From contig FLMG01001160.1 in NCBI GenBank assembly GCA_900088475.1, positions 1-64,000 of the forward strand: a stretch of DNA of 64,000 nt. Reading direction: 5' to 3'. Below the pieces are notes generated by a model. That model searched no databases. It was not told the origin of the DNA and saw only the letters and a program-made list of their open reading frames with translations. The position numbers and the translations under genes are program-made. Every line of letters begins with the position of its first letter. Within the stretch, counting starts at the first letter, position 1. This stretch comes from Hyphochytrium catenoides. Its lineage: Eukaryota > Protista > Hyphochytriomycota. Below are positions 20,696-31,481 of the stretch, in pieces.

Positions 20696-21865
20696 TCAAT
20701 AATAGTATCGATTGGCAGGATCGACGTTGGCTGTGAATTGCAGTTCCTTTGCATCCTCAATGGCAGCAACCGCACTACCGTCACAATCCTCCTCACGCTG
20801 ACTGCTTGCAGCCATATCGGTTCCAACATCGGGTCCACCACCACTGAGCTTGCCTGAATAGTGCTGAAGGCATTGGCCTTGGACCTTGGCAAAATAACTG
20901 CAGTCAGTCACCATGCAGAAGGTCACGGTAACCTGCGCATGTGCATTGCACATTCCCCTCGTCTTTGCTACTTTCTCACAGCCGCCGACTGCACAGAGAG
21001 GAATCTTCTCTTCCTTTGTTTCAACATGTGCTTGGCCAATGCTCCTCTTGCGCTTCCTGATCGCTGGCGAAGCAGCTCGCTTCGCCTCGCTAGAACTTCC
21101 GTGTCCAATGCATACCCCACCACGTTTTGCAACCTTGGTGCAGTTTTCGACCTTGCAGGTCTTTATGGTTGCACCATGGGAGATGCAAACACCGCCTCTT
21201 ACACTGCCCTTTACGCAGTCTGGCATACTGCAGCGCTTTACCTTCGCCCCATGCGCCTTGCAGACCCCTTGTCGAACAGCATACTTTCCGCATCCTTCCA
21301 TTTTGCATCTAATAACCTTCACTTTGGCTCCGTGAGATACACAAATGCCTCCTTTCCTGGCGTACTTGCTGCATCCTTCTACGCTGCATCTCCGTATGGG
21401 TTTCTTTCCATCACATTTGCTATTAGTGCCAAGAGGAGAAGCACTTTTGCAGGATTCGCTACTTAAAGATTTTTTACAGATGTCGATGTCCGCTGTTGAG
21501 GTCGCCTTCTTCATCACGGCACTAATGGCGGGCAGTTCTTTGGTGTTGCCGGCAAGCTTGGTTTTGAGAGCGGGTAGAGTGACTGCGCCCGTTGACGCGG
21601 GCCCAGCTGTTTTGCTGCCTGAGACAGCTGACACAAGGCTCTTTAGCACTTGAGCCGCTTGAATCTCCCTATTTAGCGTTGCTATGCTGGGAAGGAAGGT
21701 TCCCTGGCCACGCAAAGAAGGAGAAGTCGGAAAAACAGCGCGAGGAGGCATTGTCGAAAGACTCATGGCCTCTGCGCGGGTAGAACTAGAACTCGGTGAC
21801 AGCTTGAAAGGGGTGCTCGGCTTCGCATTTGCGGGGAAGTCCGTTTTTGGAGAGGAGAGAAGCAT
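20696..21865 (-). CDS. WRKY19-like Cys/His-repeat protein, single exon
   Basis: Six repeats such as CSVEGCSKYARKGGICVSHG, CKMEGCGKYAVRQGVCKAHG, CSMPDCVKGSVRGGVCISHG and CKVENCTKVAKRGGVCIGHG. ATG at 21865. Confidence 0.85.
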   Translation of the reverse strand: MLLSSPKTDFPANAKPSTPFKLSPSSSSTRAEAMSLSTMPPRAVFPTSPSLRGQGTFLPSIATLNREIQAAQVLKSLVSAVSGSKTAGPASTGAVTLPALKTKLAGNTKELPAISAVMKKATSTADIDICKKSLSSESCKSASPLGTNSKCDGKKPIRRCSVEGCSKYARKGGICVSHGAKVKVIRCKMEGCGKYAVRQGVCKAHGAKVKRCSMPDCVKGSVRGGVCISHGATIKTCKVENCTKVAKRGGVCIGHGSSSEAKRAASPAIRKRKRSIGQAHVETKEEKIPLCAVGGCEKVAKTRGMCNAHAQVTVTFCMVTDCSYFAKVQGQCLQHYSGKLSGGGPDVGTDMAASSQREEDCDGSAVAAIEDAKELQFTANVDPANRYYY

Positions 21866-24800
21866 CACCGCTTCTCTCCTACTATTGGATAGATCTGTCT
21901 TGGGGATTGTAGTGTCTCACTGATGCGCAGCAGAAGGTTTGTTGTGCTGCTCTTGGATAGACAACTCGATAAGCAAGAATACACAGCCGAGCAAGAGAAA
22001 GCTGCATCAGCTTTGGAGCCCAGAGGAAGAGAAGAAGTTCCCGCTAATCCTTCCGAAGTTGGAGGCAAATGACACTGTGCATGCCTCCAATGAGGATTGC
22101 AGCAGAGTCCGCGCACGACAAGGCAGTTCTTGCTCTTTCCTGACGCCTTGTTGTTGCAGGCCCACACCTAAAGACAAGTTATGCTGGCGGCAAGACGCAT
22201 GGAAGCCCATTAAAATGCACGACAACAGTCTTGTCAACTGAGACCTCTTCCCCCAGACCGTACCGTACCACATGAGCAGTGCGAAAGCGATTGGGAGAGG
22301 TCCGACTACAGGAAGGGGAGGAAAAGTAAAGGAGCGTGATAAAAGAGCGAGGAAAAAGGGGTCGGCACAGGAAGCCAGCTGAAGAAGGAAGATGGCTGGT
22401 TCACTGTGCACAAGTGTGGCTGGAGACACTCCAGGCCTATCTACAGCGTCCAGCGTGAGCCCGATGTGAGGGAGAAGGAAAGTCTCTAACGAGAGGAGGG
22501 GAAGGGGCCAAAAGAGCTGCACGAAATGTAGAGCAATCAAGCCATCACTGGATAGCATGTCGTGACACCTAAATGGGAAACGGGATTGACAGTCCTACGA
22601 AGCCCTTGTTAATATTCGCATGTCCATGTTGGATGAGACACCCAACCACTGCTTTAAGGCTGCCATTGAACCATTATCAGAGCCACAATGAGGGCACGGC
22701 CAAGGAAGAATATGGTCTTCTTTGAACAGGAACTCGTAGGGACTCCAACCTCTTCTCCCTTCTGCTCAATAACTTTCTCTTTCCCTCCTTCCCTCAGCCC
22801 TGTTCTCTCTCTGCTGGTTGAACAGCTTCAAGTCCCCCATTCGAGTGCCCAGTCGACCTGCATGTCTGGGACTCAAGGCCCAACCTCGACCAGCACATTG
22901 TCCGCCTCCCTGGGAAAGGTTGGACATTGTTCTTTTTACCTCAGCAGAAGGGTGAGACGATCTCCTTGGTCGGGCTCATGGCTAGAACTCTAGGACAGGC
23001 CACTCTGTTGATTGAGGCACTTCTGCTGTGTGGTCCGATCCTTTTCTAAGGGAGAAATCAAGCGACTTTCCTCTGGACTGTGAAGCCTTTCTGCCGTTCT
23101 CTATATCTCTTTCCTGATTTAATTCGGTGTTCTCAAACCCTTTTTCACTCTGTTTCGTAGTTGGGGGGGAGGAACTTTCTTTATGTTTGAGGTTTCTGCA
23201 AGACCTGTAAAGTGAAAGGAAGAAATTATTTCCCGTCAAGAGCTGTCCATGAGATGATTGTCTCTCGGCCCTACAATATTCACATATTCTGCAAATGCCT
23301 AGATTGGCTCGTGGACTATCGACTTCTCAATAACAGTGAACCTATAATCTGTGTTTTGTCTTTGTTTCTTAGTCCCATAACTGACGCATATATGATGCCT
23401 CCATATTGACTTATTTGTGAGGTCAGGGCAAGAGCCATGTACGCCCATCATCCTGCACGTCCTGCTGTCCAACTGAGCTACTACTACTACTACTACAGGC
23501 TCGTGACTACACTGTACATGTACTTCATTTGTGTAGGAACTAGTAGGAAGTAAGAACTAAAGTTCCCAAGAAAGAACAGCTTGTCATAAAGGCTTTACCT
23601 CTTTTTGGTGGGAGGTTCACATTTCTACGAATAATAAGGCTGGCTACAGTATTCCATTGGCTGGCTAACTAACCGCATCATCCTTCCCGCCAATAAATAT
23701 TGGTGCGTTGAAGAGACATGACCATAGAACAACAGTTATGAGAGCACGACTACCAGGAAGACGAGGGGAGCCAATGAACGCGTTAGTTCCTAGAGGGTTA
23801 AAAACGGCATCGTCACTACTCACGATGAATCTTCACAAGGTAAGCTCATTATTCATAGGGAATATATATTCAGTAAGATCCATCACGGAATCAAGCTGAT
23901 GGTGCAGTATCTATGACTGCCGCTATATGCAGTGGCCACAGCAAGGTGATCACATGTGGCACTTGGACTGCTGTTGGCACTGTAAGACTTCGGTTAGCAT
24001 GAGAGTGCACTGAGCTAGTGGTCTCCTGACCATGCTGTGTAACTGGTGCTGCGTGATGCACGTAAGCTTTCTATCTCATATATGGCATCTACTTCCGGGC
24101 ATGACGTTGTCCTTGTGATTGAAGAGGGGCAAGGCAGCAACTCAAGTTTCCATGTAGGAGAGGGCTAGCGATGGGTTAGATTGTTTGATCTTAATAGCGG
24201 CACGCTACTGTTATATTCTGCTGAATGGAGTTGCTCATGACCATACGACAGTGGCATTGACTCTGAGAGCTCGCCTCCTGCGAATCTTTGTTGGTAGCTC
24301 TAAGTATTTATTCAGACCATCGAATCTGTACGGCCACCCTTCTGTGGATGGGTATTCCTGGCGAGGGCCTCCCTTGCTGCTTGTTCGCTGTGGTTGATAG
24401 CAGCGATACTTAGGAAGAGCTGCCCAGAGCGATCGAAAAACTGAGAGAATGCTTGAGGGTCGACTGATACGTCCTACTTCTAATTGGCCTAACAATCATG
24501 ACTGGAAACGGTATTCAGTCCTAATGGCTGGCAGCTTCCGCTACCTGTAAGAAAACTTGCCTCCTAGCAAATGCTCCTTCTTCGACGCAACCATTCAAAC
24601 CTTGAAAGGCTTCTCAGGCTGGACCTTACCCTAGGCCACTGACCTTGTGGACACATGTGGACACATTGGTTAGGTTCGATATGGGAGTAGCATCTCCAGT
24701 AATGGTAGGTTGAACAGAGGTAGGATGACATATTACGAAGCAACTGAAGAAGGTTGGCCGACCATTGCAGTGGGGGACTTATGGCCAAGGATATCGCCAT

Positions 24801-25307: not shown

Positions 25308-27267
25308 TTAGAACTGAATGCTGTCAAGCTCTTCCTCGCGCGAACCGCTAGCCTTCGGAGATGGCGACGGTTCAACCCCATCGGGACCGGGAGTTTGAGT
25401 TGCGTCAGTATTAGCCCGCTTTCGCATCTCCTCCTGCGGGAGTGAGTACGAGATAGTGACGTCAGTTCAGAACGCCTGATTAGTTCCAGACACCACAATC
25501 ATGAGCGCTTACTTTTAATTGCGACAAAAGAGAAAACCCAGCTCTTGAGTGGTTGCCTCGAACGTCAAAGTTACTCCCTACATCTAGACCTGGCTCACGA
25601 TGGAAGGAAGATTGTTTGTGGGTTGGAGATGCCCATTCGAAACCATGTTCTCTGTTCCCTGTATTATCTACATGACTCAAGCTGTCCATGTTCCGCAAAG
25701 GCGCGTCCTGGGTTGAGGCAGAGGTTACGCTGTAGGATAAACGTGGGCCATAATTGTCCGCCTGAGTTGAACGGCTGTTGGCTCTATCTGTTGACGCGAG
25801 AGGCCGAGGGTGCCCAAGCTGGCGCTTTTTGTGGCTGCCTGGCTGACCAGCTCGGCCTTGCTTGCTTCCTGGGCCTCTAGTATTATCGCGTGAGTACATC
25901 TCAACCAGTGTTATATACAGCTCCACGTTTGGATGAAGCTCCTTTAGCAAAGCCTGCGCAGAGTACTGCTTAGCCATTTTCTTAGCGAATCCGCTGCCTA
26001 CTCCTACGCGGTTGCCACACGACGCGATGAACTTGAACAAAAACTGGTGAGTTGTCCCAGTTGCTGCCAGCTCTTCGTTGGAACGCTGGGTCTGCTCAGA
26101 CTTATAGTTGACAATGATCCCAGGATTTCTGTTCTGGTACTCTTGCAGGACTTGTGCCGGAGTTTTGATACCAAGTTCAGCGCAGGCGGGCACCACACGA
26201 GGGTCTTCGACCTGTAGACGAATGAATTGACTGATCGTCATATTTTGCGAATTGTTCGTGGAGGTAGGCAACTGCTCTCCATGTAGCGGCGAGAGCACTT
26301 GTCCTTTCGCCTTCAGGTCCTGCCAGAAACCTGGGAGCAGCATATCAAGAGTAGCCTCCGCGGCTAGCTGTTTAGCCATCTTCTTGTTCCCGTACTCAGC
26401 CTTCCCATACTCAATACCATCCAGGTACACTGAGCAGCTATAAGGACAGAGCGGGTCGTCAGCTTCCTTTATGACGTACTTGGGAAGGCACTTGAGCTTT
26501 GTCATCGTATACTCTTGCAAGAAGCTGATAGCCGTCTTTCCCTCCGGGGACGGGATATCGTTCTCACCGTTTCTGAGAGCCTGCCGGCGCGCCTCCTTTG
26601 CCTCCTTCTTCTTCTGCGTCTTCGCAAGCTTCGCCGCTTTATCATTTTGTCCCTGACAGACGTCAGTAGAACTCAGGCCTGAGTCAGCCACAAAGTTTGA
26701 AGATGACCCTTTACTGGCCGAAAAGAGGCTAGCAGCGGAGTCTTCGTCCTTTTGAGCAATAGTGTCCGCGACATCTGGACCATACTCTTGCGCAGTCTCG
26801 ACCGATCGAGCTTTCTTTTCTTTGGATGACAATTCCCCGCCTTTATTTCCCTCTGTTGCATGAAAGCCAGCTCCTCGTTTCCTTTTCAAACCTAGAGAGC
26901 TCTTTTTCAGCGTCTCCATGCAGAGGTCATATATCTCTGTAAAGAGGACCCTAGGGTTGGCCGAGGTGAATGCATTGGAAAGGGTAAAGCTAGGTTGAAA
27001 CGTCCTGAGTGGGGGCGAGTGGATCTCTACATGGTGCTCTGATGGACAAATATATGGTCTGGTCCAGGTGACTACTCTGCTTTCTTGGTGGAAATAGCAC
27101 GTAGTACCACTGATGTGTGACACGGAAGTCCAGCCACGAGGAAGGGTATTTGAGAGCAGGCTACTCTCATAGTCTTGGGCACTATCTGCGTGCGTTCGCC
27201 CCTGCGCTCGATCGGACTCAAGTCCATGTTGTGGTGCGGCCTCGCCAGCAAGACTTTTGCCTTCCAT
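25308..27267 (-). CDS. DGCR8: DGCR8/Pasha-like Microprocessor subunit (WW/Rhed-like region, two dsRBDs, C-terminal helix); exons 27267-25513 and 25433-25308, about 626 aa
   Basis: WW-like LPRGWTSVSHISGTTCYFHQESRVVTWTRPY..HSPPL. dsRBD1 GKTAISFLQEY..PYSCSVYLDGIEYG..KKMAKQLAAEATLDMLLPGF. Linker VEDPRV. dsRBD2 TPAQVLQEYQNRN..KKMAKQYSAQALLKELHPNV..LVEMYSR. The phase-0 intron 25512-25434 (GTAAGC..CGCAG) yields LLSQLK|EEMRKR. Confidence 0.85.
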
Positions 27268-28177: not shown

Positions 28178-31100
28178 ATGTTGCTGTCAGCTGCTAGAAG
28201 AGGCTTCAGGGCCTTCCCTGGAAGCCAAAGGCCTTTAGCGGTTATCAATGGCCTGGTGGGTTCTAGCATAACACTATCTGCAATAGTCGGCTGACACTTT
28301 CTTGTCACAGGGACCACGACGATACTTGGCAGCAAAAGCGTCCGTTCTGGGCAGTTCGGATCAGTTCATTAACCGCCACATTGGGCCGCGCGATGATGAT
28401 ATCCAAGACATGCTTAAGCTTGTGGGCTTCAAGACGTTGGACGAGCTCATTGATAGTACTGTTCCGCCTCATATTCGACTGGACAATGAACTGAAGCTTC
28501 CCGATCCCAGGACCGAAGCGGAGGCTCTGGAAGAACTGAGGGCCATTGCGTCGAAAAATAAAGTCTATCGATCTTTCATCGGGATGGGCTACTATAACAC
28601 CTTCACCCCAGGCGTTATCCAGAGAAATGTGCTTGAAAATCCGGGTTGGTACACCGCCTACACCCCATATCAAGCTGAAGTGGCACAAGGCAGACTGGAG
28701 TCTTTGTTGAATTATCAGACTATGATCTGCGATATGACTGGCTTCGCAATGGCGAACGCCTCTTTATTGGATGAAGGTAAGAAGTGGCCCGAAGATAGTA
28801 AACTTTAGTCCACTAGATATTCTCACACGATCGGCAGGAACGGCTGCTGCTGAGGCGATGAACATGTGCGTGGGCGCCACCAAGAACAAGAACAAGTTTT
28901 ACGTCGCTGCAGACACTCATCCCCAGACAATAGGAGTCATTGAAACCCGCGCGAACGCCATAGGAATCGAAGTCGTAGTAGGGGATGTGGACAAACTAGA
29001 CCTGGATGCCAAGGACTACTGCGGTGTTCTAGTACAGTATCCTTCTACTTATGGAGACATCCGGAACTACTCGGATCTCGCCGCCAAGGCCAAAGCCTCT
29101 GGAGCCCTCGTCGTCGCAGCAGCAGACCTGCTGTCCCTGGCAATGCTAAAGAGTCCAGCTGAATGGGGTGCCGACATTGCCGTCGGCAGTTCCCAGAGGT
29201 TTGGAGTTCCACTATTCTTTGGTGGACCGCACGCTGGGTACTTGGCCACATCCGACAAATATAGCCGCAAAATGCCTGGTAGAATTATAGGAGTCTCCAT
29301 TGACTCGAATGGCAAGCGTGCCCTGCGGATGGCGATGCAGACTCGCGAGCAGCATATCCGCCGGGATAAGGCGACAAGCAATATCTGCACGGCTCAAGCA
29401 CTCTTGGCCAATATGGCTGGTAAGTGGGAGCTTAAGGCTAGAGGTAGTGACGGAAGGCTATAAGATTGCTGTCCGGTAGAGCGAGACATGGCTAGCGAGA
29501 TTTGAAGAAAAAGTTGTTTATGGCTGCGATAGCTGTAGAGTGGCGTCTTTGTGTACGGCTAACCATTGATGGACGGGGTCAGTAGGAGTGGAGACTTCCT
29601 ATATGCGGGCTAGCCTCTAAACCCACTTCTGAAATAGGATTCTATGCGGTGTACCATGGCCCTGAAGGCATAAAGGAGATTGCCGCTCGTGTAAACAACG
29701 CAACGAACATCTTGGCTGAGGGAATCAAGCAGGCAGGGCATGAGGTGGTGACCAAGAATTTCTTTGATACAATTACAGTGAAGGCAAAAGGGGGATCCGC
29801 GGCTATTGTCAAGGCTCTGACAGCACGGGGCATTAATGTCAGGCCTATCGATGACGAGTGCGTGGGCATTGCCTTGGATGAGACGGTTACAGAGGAGGAC
29901 TTGACCAATCTGATCCAGGGCTTCGGCGTGAAGAATGTTGACTTAGAGGCTCTTGCTAACAAGGCCGGCAGCAGCATTCCCGATGCTCTGCAGAGGAAAA
30001 GCGAGTTTTTGACTCATCCTATCTTCAACACTTACAGGTCAGAGACAAAGATGATGCGCTATATCAAGACGCTTGAGGACAAAGATGTAGGGCTCAATCG
30101 CTCCATGATTGCGCTTGGCTCCTGTACTATGAAGCTGAACGCAGTCAGCGAACTGCAGCCAGTGAGCTGGCCAGAATTCTCTGGAATCCATCCTTTTGTT
30201 CCTGAGGACCAGGTTATGGGGTACACCGAGATGATCGAAACTCTGCATGATGCTCTTGCCAAGATAACGGGCTTCGCTGCTGTGTCCTCACAGCCCAATT
30301 CTGGTGCTCAGGGGGAGTATGCGGGTTTGATGGCTATCCGCTCCTATCNNNNNNNNNNNNNNNNNNNNNNGTGGCCAAGTATATATGGATGGTGCCAATA
30401 TGAATGCCCAGGTGGGTCTGACCAGTCCTGGACACATTGGTGCTGATGTCTGCCACCTTAACTTGCACAAGACGTTCTGCATTCCACATGGTGGAGGGGG
30501 CCCTGGAGTCGGAAGTATTGGCGTGGCAGAGCATTTGGCGCCGTTCCTCCCGGGACACAAAGTCATCCCTTCCGCGGGAGAAGGCAGAAATGTTAAGGTA
30601 CGGCATACTGTTCATTTACTTATTTACTCATCTGCCTCTGCCTACTATTCTTCATCAGTAAAAACATACCTTTCCTATCCAAGCTTTGCTTCACTATTGC
30701 GCATCATTTACCTCATCGCACCTCCAGGAAGTTACCTGAAGCTCTTTTACTGCTCACCTACTAGTCTGGGGTTTTCGCTCTGTGCTTACCAGCGAGCCTC
30801 CCGCGCCCTCATATGTAGGTCAAGCAGGAGGGCGCCATATCAGCAGCACCATATGGTAGTCCAGGCATCCTCCCCATTCCTTGGATGTATATCAGAATGT
30901 GCGGCGCTGAGGGTCTCAAAAAGGCAACAAGCGTGGCCATTCTCAACGCTAACTACATGGCCAAGCGTCTTGCCCCGCACTATGAAATCGCCTTTTTGGG
31001 AAGCAACGGCCAATGCGCTCATGAGTTCATCATTGACATTCGCCCGTTGAAAAAGTTCAACGTCTCCGAAGAGGACATCGCCAAGAGACTACAGGATTTC

Positions 31101-31481
31101 GGCTTCCACAGCCCTACCATGTCCTGGCCGGTGCCAGGCACGTTGATGATTGAGCCCACCGAAAGTGAGGACAGAGAAGAGCTTGACAGGCTGTGTGAGG
31201 CTCTGATCAAGATCAGAAAGGAGATTCAGGATATTGCAGATGGCAAGATCGAGGCGGCCAACTCACCCTTGACCAACGCTCCACACACGGCCGCTCTTGT
31301 CATGAGTGACAAGTGGGATCGCCAGTACTCCAGAGAGCAGGCAGCCTTCCCAGGCTCGTGGCAAAAGGGAGGGGTTGCCAAATTCTGGCCTACTGTAGGA
31401 CGAGTGGACAACGTACATGGTGACCGCAACCTCATTTGCACTTGCCCACCACTAGAAAGTTACGCCGAGGAGGCGGCATGA
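28178..31481 (+). CDS. GLDC: Glycine dehydrogenase (decarboxylating), glycine cleavage system P protein, mitochondrial
   Basis: Presequence [13 protein letters not shown]. Motifs [78 protein letters not shown]-site [41 protein letters not shown] and [11 protein letters not shown]. Confidence 0.97.
30349..30370. other. Assembly gap within GLDC
   Basis: N run. The conserved GcvP segment between AIRSY and [14 protein letters not shown] is missing, so the true gap is probably longer than 22 nt. Confidence 0.95.

What the first reader, a model, noticed from the sequence alone, without database searches (positions are those of the whole stretch)
25400..25545. Drosha-binding C-terminal helix of DGCR8 appears only after splicing
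The ORF track ends ...FSLLSQLKVSAHDCGVWN. Removing a canonical 79-nt phase-0 intron (25512-25434, GTAAGC...CCCGCAG) gives ...GFSLLSQLK|EEMRKRAN. This resembles the human DGCR8 C-terminal tail (recalled as [17 protein letters not shown]) that docks on the Drosha RNase III domains. A short motif conserved inside otherwise divergent low-complexity sequence implies a conserved RNase III partner (inference). ORF-only annotation would miss it.
Basis: partly seen in the sequence, partly recalled or inferred. Interest (0 to 1): 0.85.

Follow-up and report, generated by a model that had tools for sequence, protein, structure and literature searches.

The report
Pasha tail motif restored by splicing
A relative of water moulds carries a gene for Pasha/DGCR8, the partner of the microRNA-cutting enzyme Drosha; removing a 79-base intron restores the short tail motif that docks onto Drosha in humans, which suggests (untested) that this protein pairing is much older than animals.

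Summary
Observation confirmed. The minus-strand ORF 25480-27267 is a clear DGCR8/Pasha homologue: WW/Rhed-like segment plus two dsRBDs, E about 1e-30 to human DGCR8. A phase-0 GTAAGC...CCCGCAG intron (25512-25434, 79 nt) joins ...FSLLSQLK to EEMRKRAN....

A profile built only from 50 non-oomycete family tails scores the spliced tail 19.1 bits and the unspliced tail 0.4. Among all 110,436 open GT-AG joins in the window, this join ranks first (23.5 bits; next unrelated 8.6).

The motif matches the start of human DGCR8 728-751, the minimal tail that binds and stabilises Drosha. It is 10/11 identical to an unnamed protist-side relative. Saprolegnian oomycetes, a coral and Balamuthia encode the motif without an intron, so it does not depend on any splice prediction.

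On a quick tree the window protein is sister to all oomycetes, in a protist group separate from animals.

Not shown: no transcript evidence for the junction, no test of binding, and no check of a Drosha-like partner (the scan's note on one in this genome is unchecked). Direct comparison with the human tail alone is not significant; the family profile carries the case.

I found no paper on Pasha in the oomycete lineage, though databases auto-name some copies. The scan noted this gene on this window (s1-356914), not on other DNA.

The parts
25513..27267 (-). Exon 1 of the Pasha/DGCR8-like gene (585 codons from the ATG at 27267). It ends ...AGFSLLSQLK. The 5' end was not verified beyond the first ATG after an upstream stop.
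   Evidence: ORF list; length divisible by 3; E 1.2e-30 / 3.9e-30 to human DGCR8 chains 6v5b_C / 6lxd_B.
27001..27150 (-). WW / Rhed-like segment (aa 40-89).
   Evidence: Aligns to human DGCR8 301-349, and to 3le4_A and 4e5r_A. Pfam WW is below the curated cut-off (14.6 bits against 26.9).
25876..26556 (-). Tandem dsRBD1-dsRBD2 core (aa 238-464).
   Evidence: Aligns to human DGCR8 504-704. Pfam dsrm 3.5e-11 for dsRBD1. Aligned with oomycete orthologues in A1.
25434..25512 (-). Proposed 79-nt phase-0 U2-type intron, GTAAGC...CCCGCAG.
   Evidence: GTAAG is enriched in the window (152 against 106.7 +/- 9.4 expected). Two introns of the neighbouring glycine dehydrogenase gene have the same style: GTAAGA..CGGCAG and GTAAGT..AAATAG.
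25442..25448 (-). TACTCAC, a candidate branch site 8 nt before the acceptor AG (fits YTNAY).
   Evidence: Read from the sequence. A CTCAC also lies 11 nt before the acceptor of glycine dehydrogenase intron 1. Inference only.
25480..25482 (-). In-frame stop TAA inside the intron. It ends the protein at ...QLKVSAHDCGVWN if the intron is retained.
25308..25433 (-). Exon 2: 41 codons (EEMRKRAN...DSIQF) plus the stop TAA at 25310-25308.
25513..25536 (-). First half of the tail motif (FSLLSQLK), the last 8 codons of exon 1.
25410..25433 (-). Second half of the tail motif (EEMRKRAN), the first 8 codons of exon 2.
   Evidence: LLSQLKEEMRK is 10/11 identical to P0016 (E 2e-5).

Best explanation
The gene at 25308-27267 (minus strand) encodes a 626-residue Pasha/DGCR8 homologue in two exons.

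Removing a canonical 79-nt phase-0 intron joins ...FSLLSQLK to EEMRKRAN.... This recreates the conserved C-terminal-tail (CTT) motif of the family, [IL]-L-x-[KRQ]-L-[KRQ]-x-E-M-[RKL]-[KR], about 115 residues after dsRBD2 in an otherwise unconserved, low-complexity tail. This part is shown by sequence comparison.

By homology with human DGCR8 728-751, the motif most likely forms a short amphipathic helix that docks onto the RNase III domain(s) of a Drosha-type enzyme. The best candidates are the oomycete-lineage 'DCL2'/Drosha-like protein, or the unchecked 'Drosha-architecture RNase III' noted elsewhere in this genome. Docking would tether the WW/Rhed and dsRBD RNA-binding parts to the nuclease, as in the animal Microprocessor. 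This part is inferred.

The intron is specific to this lineage, because relatives encode the motif contiguously. Confidence by step: about 0.9 that the intron is real and the motif is the homologue of the DGCR8 CTT; about 0.55 that it binds a Drosha-like RNase III in this organism.
For: Family identity: E about 1e-30 to human DGCR8 over the WW/Rhed and dsRBD1-2 regions.

Motif: 58 non-oomycete relatives carry it. The profile gives 19.1 bits spliced against 0.4 unspliced. The join ranks first of 110,436 joins in the window, 23.5 against 8.6 bits. The full-length spliced protein scores 16.8 bits, and 93 of 185 family proteins score at least 10. The motif is 10/11 identical to P0016, E 2e-5.

Independence from splice prediction: Saprolegnia and Achlya, and a coral and Balamuthia, encode the motif within one exon.

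Selective conservation: the motif is 50-83% identical among oomycete orthologues, against 11-29% for the linker.

Splice signals: GTAAGC donor, CAG acceptor and TACTCAC; GTAAG enrichment; similar introns in the neighbouring gene.

Function in humans: residues 728-751 are the minimal tail required for Drosha solubility (PMC5700927). [quoted passage not shown] The motif maps to 6lxd_B residues 728-744 and to the 5b16_B peptide.

Candidate partner: oomycete DCL2 is described as most similar to Drosha (PMC10080066; PMC4791657). The scan note s1-365119 reports a Drosha-architecture RNase III in this genome (unchecked).
Against: - No transcript evidence for the junction. An exact scan of metagenome contigs for exon 2 found nothing, and no protein from this organism is in the protein collections.
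- phmmer of the spliced tail against the PDB did not recover DGCR8, and BLASTP against a vertebrate tail is off-register with E 0.06. The human comparison alone is therefore not significant.
- The window's motif lacks the P-N that precedes it in most animals, and has Arg where human has L742 (M-R-K-R-A against M-K-R-L-A). Its helical hydrophobic moment is lower (0.34 against 0.58).
- Crown oomycetes have a more degenerate tail (-4 to 0 bits), and Phytophthora-type copies seem to lack dsRBD1. The function may have drifted in this lineage.
- In Plasmodiophora, a Drosha-like enzyme did not interact with the two dsRBD-domain proteins tested (PMC13547706).
- The partner gene could not be inspected or modelled here.
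Confidence: 0.7

Rival explanations
1. The intron is real and the motif is homologous, but in this lineage the helix serves another partner or role. Examples are docking to a canonical Dicer-like enzyme (DCL1), self-association, or binding another nuclear factor, rather than a Drosha-type nuclease.
For: Oomycete literature assigns small-RNA biogenesis to DCL1 and DCL2 and mentions no Pasha. Crown-oomycete tails diverge from the animal consensus. The window has Arg at the position of human L742. In Plasmodiophora the Drosha-like enzyme did not interact with the two dsRBD proteins tested.
Against: The motif is kept in the same place, in the same protein architecture, across animals, an amoebozoan and this lineage, which is most simply explained by a conserved partner. 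The only demonstrated function of this segment is Drosha binding.
Confidence: 0.2
2. Both isoforms are made. Intron retention stops the protein 10 codons into the intron and yields a tail-less Pasha that binds RNA but cannot dock on the nuclease, so splicing of this intron regulates complex assembly. This is compatible with the main reading, not exclusive of it.
For: An in-frame TAA lies 10 codons into the intron. The intron sits exactly inside the docking motif, and only in this lineage. There is a tandem CAG|GAG|GAG acceptor.
Against: No data on isoforms. The splice sites look strong and ordinary. An intron position inside a motif can be coincidence.
Confidence: 0.1
3. There is no splicing. 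The protein ends at ...QLKVSAHDCGVWN, and the downstream EEMRKRAN is a chance match.
For: No transcript evidence. Many GT-AG joins can extend the frame. Another frame is also open across exon 2. An arbitrary join elsewhere reached 14.6 bits.
Against: The join is the top scorer of 110,436 by about 15 bits. It completes a motif whose first half already lies at the exact end of exon 1. It uses the only GTAAG donor in the region and the first CAG after a branch-like site. Relatives carry the complete motif contiguously.
Confidence: 0.04

Closest known systems
Human DGCR8 C-terminal tail (residues 728-751; PDB 5B16 peptide, 6V5B/6V5C, 6LXD/6LXE)
   Same: Same protein family and architecture (WW/Rhed, two dsRBDs, tail). 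The motif lies after dsRBD2. The core L-S-x-L-x-E-E-M-[KR]-[KR]-x-A is shared: LLSQLKEEMRKRA against [13 protein letters not shown], 7 of 13 identical and 5 conservative.
   Different: The linker from dsRBD2 is about 115 residues, against about 30. There is no P-N before the helix. Arg replaces L742. The coding sequence is split by an intron. Binding to an RNase III enzyme is untested. The similarity to the human tail alone is not statistically significant.
Ichthyosporean Pasha (Brate et al. 2018, PMC6206976)
   Same: A non-animal Pasha with a WW domain and two dsRBDs, used to argue that the Microprocessor predates animals.
   Different: Those are holozoans, close to animals. This gene is from the oomycete lineage (stramenopiles). 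That paper states that no Pasha was known outside Holozoa.
Oomycete 'DRBM domain-containing' / auto-named 'Microprocessor complex subunit dgcr8' proteins (Saprolegnia diclina XP_008610716, Achlya OQR95064, Aphanomyces cochlioides KAG9412361 and others)
   Same: Closest relatives: 35-40% identity over the dsRBD core. Sister clade on the tree. They have a conserved terminal L-Q-Q-L-K-S-E-L-R-K-S-L motif.
   Different: Their motif lies at the very C-terminus, is encoded without an intron, and is much further from the animal consensus (-4 to 0 bits against 16.8). Phytophthora-type copies seem to lack dsRBD1.
Balamuthia mandrillaris 'Microprocessor complex subunit dgcr8' (KAL6047321)
   Same: A non-holozoan family member with a strong tail motif, PNMRLLVKLREEMSKRF (17.2 bits). 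It falls on the same protist side of the tree.
   Different: It is an amoebozoan. The motif is followed by about 300 more residues and is encoded contiguously.
Dictyostelium DrnB-RbdB and plant DCL1-HYL1 'microprocessors'
   Same: A dsRBD cofactor tethered to an RNase III enzyme for primary-microRNA processing.
   Different: These are different cofactor families, paired with Dicer-type enzymes. They were not shown here to have the WW/Rhed segment or this tail motif. The comparison is from the literature only.

Membership tests
DGCR8/Pasha family | WW-containing Rhed-like segment N-terminal to the dsRBDs | tested here: met
   aa 40-89 align to human DGCR8 301-349 and to the 3le4_A and 4e5r_A Rhed/WW structures (E 1.6e-8 and 5.1e-8). 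Pfam WW alone is below its cut-off.
DGCR8/Pasha family | Two tandem dsRBDs with the DGCR8-type core | tested here: met
   aa 238-464 align to human 504-704, 75 bits. Best hits in 1.84 billion representatives are DGCR8-family proteins.
DGCR8/Pasha family | Haem-ligating cysteine of the Rhed domain | not tested
   The stretch after the WW reads ...PPLRTFQPSF with no Cys visible. No alignment of that position was made here. Scan note s1-357137 raises the point.
DGCR8/Pasha family | C-terminal tail motif after dsRBD2 | tested here: met
   Met only after splicing: 19.1 bits for the tail, 16.8 for the full length and 23.5 for the junction peptide, against 0.4 unspliced.
DGCR8/Pasha family | Forms a complex with a Drosha-type RNase III | not testable with these tools
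   No multimer modelling and no access to the partner gene. The only leads are scan note s1-365119 and the oomycete DCL2 literature.
DGCR8 CTT Drosha-docking helix | Consensus [IL]-L-x-[KR]-L-[KRQ]-x-E-M-x-[KR] with hydrophobic positions at i, i+1, i+4 and i+8 | tested here: met
   L-L-S-Q-L-K-E-E-M-R-K: the hydrophobic positions are kept, and Gln replaces [KR] at position 4.
DGCR8 CTT Drosha-docking helix | Further hydrophobic residue at i+11 (human L742) and the P-N cap | tested here: not met
   The window has Arg at the L742 position and A-G-F-S instead of P-N-x-x. Some animal and protist members also lack P-N.
DGCR8 CTT Drosha-docking helix | Adopts an amphipathic helix | tested here: inconclusive
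   Helical hydrophobic moment is 0.34, against 0.58 for human and 0.50 for Saprolegnia. No structure prediction of the spliced tail was run.
Canonical U2-type GT-AG intron | Consensus donor, acceptor and branch-like site; length typical of the genome | tested here: met
   GTAAGC, CAG and TACTCAC; 79 nt. GTAAG is enriched in the window. The neighbouring gene's introns are 61 and about 218 nt with GTAAG donors.
Canonical U2-type GT-AG intron | Junction present in transcripts | not testable with these tools
   No transcript data could be reached. The exact scan for exon 2 in metagenome contigs found nothing.

The most novel reading that the evidence does not exclude
A true Microprocessor, meaning a Drosha-type nuclease held by the tail helices of a Pasha dimer, operates in the oomycete lineage of stramenopiles and also in some Amoebozoa. 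The complex and its docking mode would then predate the split of these supergroups instead of arising in Holozoa. This organism would keep the most animal-like version of the docking helix known in its lineage.
Probability: 0.45. Interest if true: 0.8.

Novelty: new member of a known kind. Interest (0 to 1): 0.62.

Why it matters
The Microprocessor (Drosha plus Pasha/DGCR8) has been regarded as an animal, or at most holozoan, invention (PMC6206976). Recent papers state that Pasha is absent from brown algae (PMC12867755) and was not identified in Naegleria or Acanthamoeba (PMC13315211).

Here a relative of oomycetes keeps the Pasha domains and also the short linear motif whose only known role is to dock onto Drosha. 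It is preserved inside a tail that has otherwise drifted beyond recognition. That is the kind of evidence that points to a conserved protein-protein interface, and it makes one question directly testable with one peptide and one enzyme: does a Drosha-Pasha complex exist outside Holozoa?

There is also a practical lesson. ORF-only or poor 3'-end gene models will drop this motif, and several public oomycete models of this gene look truncated or fused.

Tried and rejected
- phmmer of the 67-residue spliced tail against all PDB chains gave no DGCR8 hit at E up to 10. BLASTP against a vertebrate tail gave an off-register match, E 0.06. The motif is too short for pairwise detection against the human protein, so a family profile was needed.
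- The first word-based homologue search was swamped by low-complexity words and gave only 3 hits. The exhaustive representative search replaced it.
- I tried to identify the organism with a 502-residue RRM ORF: no hit. The lineage was inferred from the tree and the scan's notes instead.
- The exact scan of metagenome contigs for exon 2, which would have caught genomic or cDNA-like contigs, found none. The related-locus scan returned one AT-rich Phytophthora-type copy (L006) with a degenerate tail.
- I tested the idea that the intron position is shared with Phytophthora (KVT|ANLR against QLK|EEMR, both phase 0). A profile of the saprolegnian tails does not detect the Phytophthora tail, so this remains a suggestion only.
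- I tested for an ancient intron shared with animals or Amoebozoa, and rejected it: the coral and Balamuthia genes encode the motif in one exon.
- The 14.6-bit motif hit in the gene upstream of the P. ramorum copy is an artefact of an arbitrary join in a frame the real ORF does not use.
- The first tree run with the mixture model timed out. It was rerun with LG+G4.
- The unsupervised intron finder was too noisy to give a donor consensus.
- I did not run a structure prediction of the spliced tail.

Full report
**1. What is in the sequence.** On the minus strand an ORF runs from the ATG at 27267 to a TAA at 25482-25480 (595 codons). The last residues before a GTAAGC at 25512 are ...AGFSLLSQLK. 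Seventy-nine bases later, after ...CGTACTCACTCCCGCAG, the same frame continues with EEMRKRANTDATQTPGPDGVEPSPSPKASGSREEELDSIQF and a TAA at 25310-25308. Exon 1 is a multiple of three bases long, so the intron is phase 0. Every coordinate in the finding is correct.

**2. What the gene is.** The ORF matches human DGCR8 chains 6v5b_C and 6lxd_B at E 1.2e-30 and 3.9e-30. Two blocks align: aa 40-89 to the WW/Rhed segment (human 301-349), and aa 238-464 to the tandem dsRBDs (human 504-704). Pfam sees dsRBD1 (3.5e-11) and a sub-threshold WW. An exhaustive HMMER search of 1.84 billion representatives gave 318 relatives. The closest are saprolegnian oomycetes: Saprolegnia diclina, Achlya hypogyna and four Aphanomyces species. 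One Aphanomyces record is auto-named 'Microprocessor complex subunit dgcr8'. Further relatives are Pythium insidiosum and Phytophthora, the amoebozoans Balamuthia mandrillaris and Rhizamoeba saxonica, and many animals.

**3. Is the intron more than chance?** The bare existence of a frame-extending GT...AG pair is not informative; about 90 exist at this ORF end. The signals are nevertheless good.
- GTAAGC is the only GTAAG donor in the region.
- GTAAG is enriched in the window: 152 against 106.7 +/- 9.4 expected, and no shuffle out of 100 reached 152.
- The acceptor is the first CAG after a TACTCAC branch-like element.
- Two introns of the neighbouring glycine dehydrogenase gene, placed by that gene's split conserved reading frame, have the same style: GTAAGA...CGGCAG at 61 nt, and GTAAGT...AAATAG at about 218 nt.

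**4. The decisive evidence is the product.** In 58 non-oomycete family members, the tail after dsRBD2 carries P-N-x-x-[IL]-L-x-[KR]-L-[KRQ]-x-E-M-[RL]-K. I built a profile from 50 unique 22-mers, none from oomycetes or the window.

| Target | Score (bits) |
|---|---|
| Spliced window tail | 19.1 |
| Unspliced window tail | 0.4 |
| Best in 96,045 residues of six-frame window translation | 7.2 |
| Proposed join, ranked first of 110,436 open GT-AG joins (40-300 nt, both strands) | 23.5 |
| Best unrelated join in the window | 8.6 |
| Same donor, acceptor shifted 3 nt | 7.9 |
| Best arbitrary join in the other fetched loci (non-coding frame) | 14.6 |
| Full-length spliced protein | 16.8 |
| Balamuthia | 17.2 |

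Ninety-three of 185 family proteins reach 10 bits. LLSQLKEEMRK is 10/11 identical to LLEQLKEEMRK of an unnamed protist-side relative, P0016 (E 2e-5).

**5. The motif does not depend on splice prediction.** The closest relatives end in ...PLQQLKSELRKSLQY...PIHQLKSELRKSLKY and ...VLQQLKSELRKTLKH. In Saprolegnia and Achlya the last 60 codons, motif included, are contiguous in the genome. The coral Stylophora and Balamuthia also encode the motif inside one exon. So the intron is specific to the window's lineage, and splicing restores what relatives encode directly.
- Among oomycete orthologues the 12-residue core is 50-83% identical, while the 110-245-residue linker is 11-29% identical.
- Phytophthora ramorum has a phase-0 intron ten codons from its stop (...PIEKVT|ANLRNQMSNP). 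In an ungapped register this falls at the same motif position as the window's intron. Its tail is too degenerate for the homology to be shown, so I treat this as a suggestion only.

**6. What the motif does where it has been studied.** The PDB alignment gives human DGCR8 728-751 as [24 protein letters not shown], and the same stretch is the DGCR8 peptide of 5B16.
- Partin et al. [quoted passage not shown] - The window's motif aligns to human 731-743 with 7 of 13 identical and 5 conservative positions, and keeps the hydrophobic positions I/L731, L732, L735 and M739.
- It differs by lacking the P-N cap and by having Arg at L742. Its helical hydrophobic moment is lower (0.34 against 0.58).
- Taken alone, the human comparison is not significant. 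The family profile carries the argument.

**7. Evolutionary setting.** A quick maximum-likelihood tree (63 proteins, LG+G4, SH-aLRT only, unrooted) places the window's protein as sister to all crown oomycetes (support 98). That clade joins Balamuthia, Rhizamoeba and a few unnamed sequences on one side of a branch with support 100. All five named animals, and most unnamed sequences, are on the other side.
- There is thus no sign of a recent transfer from an animal.
- Other follow-ups on this genome call the organism a close relative of oomycetes, which fits.
- The window keeps a tail much closer to the animal and amoebozoan consensus than its oomycete cousins do.

**8. Partner and mechanism (inferred).**
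- Oomycete surveys describe 'DCL2' as having two RNase III domains and no Dicer dimerisation domain, and as 'most similar to Drosha' (PMC10080066; PMC4791657; PMC12857978). None mentions a Pasha-like cofactor.
- A first-stage note reports a 'Drosha-architecture RNase III' elsewhere in this genome (s1-365119). I could not inspect it.
- Drosha-like enzymes are also reported in Rhizaria (Plasmodiophora, PMC13547706) and Acanthamoeba (PMC13315211).
- The most economical reading is that the spliced tail docks the Pasha-like protein onto such an enzyme. I put this at about 0.55.
- The main alternative is a different partner in this lineage. A regulated intron-retention isoform without the docking helix is possible but has no support.

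**9. Novelty.**
- Bråte et al. 2018 state that no Pasha was known outside Holozoa.
- Searches of the held library for DGCR8/Pasha together with oomycete, Saprolegnia, Aphanomyces, Balamuthia, stramenopile or Amoebozoa found no report. That library is not the whole literature.
- Public databases already hold the oomycete and Balamuthia proteins, and some are auto-named.
- I therefore file this as a new member of a known kind. The new point is that the Drosha-docking motif is retained outside Holozoa, and that in this genome it is hidden by an intron.

**10. Limits.**
- There is no transcript evidence, binding test, partner sequence or structure model of the spliced tail.
- The 5' end of the gene was not examined beyond the first ATG.
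- The tree is a quick search, without bootstraps or an outgroup.
- Most relatives are unnamed.

Noticed in passing
L001 4001-6018 (P. ramorum), P0003 (Pythium brassicae), L006 291-2540: Phytophthora-type oomycete copies run from the WW domain through a linker straight into dsRBD2. dsRBD1 seems to be missing and the tail motif is degenerate, whereas Saprolegniales and this window keep both dsRBDs.
   Followed up: partly
P0022, P0077 compared with L001 6482-7135: Some public oomycete gene models of this family end in sequence resembling the downstream neighbouring gene. They are probably fused or mis-terminated models.
   Followed up: no
window 26985-27000 (minus strand, just after the WW segment): The Rhed-like stretch continues ...PPLRTFQPSF with no cysteine visible where the haem ligand would be expected. 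The scan already has a note on this (s1-357137).
   Followed up: no
window 25428-25436 (minus strand): There is a tandem acceptor CAG|GAG|GAG. Using the +3 acceptor would delete one Glu of the motif and drop the profile score to 7.9 bits.
   Followed up: partly
window 25442-25446 and about 28823-28827: Both the Pasha intron and the first glycine dehydrogenase intron carry CTCAC 8-11 nt before the acceptor AG. This may be the genome's branch-site consensus.
   Followed up: no
window 28302-31481 (+): A multi-exon glycine dehydrogenase (GcvP) gene with short GTAAG introns. It is interrupted by an assembly gap (N run) at about 30.3-30.4 kb. Another N run lies at about 32.6-32.8 kb.
   Followed up: partly
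window 20696-21868 (-): An ORF with four Zf_WRKY19 zinc-finger repeats (E 5e-37) and a right-handed beta-helix region.
   Followed up: no
L001 2803-3120: A 14.6-bit match to the tail-motif profile arises from an arbitrary GT-AG join in a frame that the real 490-residue coiled-coil ORF does not use. It is an artefact, and useful as an upper mark for the null.
   Followed up: yes
P0009 (Balamuthia mandrillaris), L008 3983-4111: An amoebozoan DGCR8-like protein carries a strong tail motif (PNMRLLVKLREEMSKRF) followed by about 300 further residues. A 2026 review did not identify DGCR8 in Naegleria or Acanthamoeba, and I saw no statement on Balamuthia in the passages read.
   Followed up: partly
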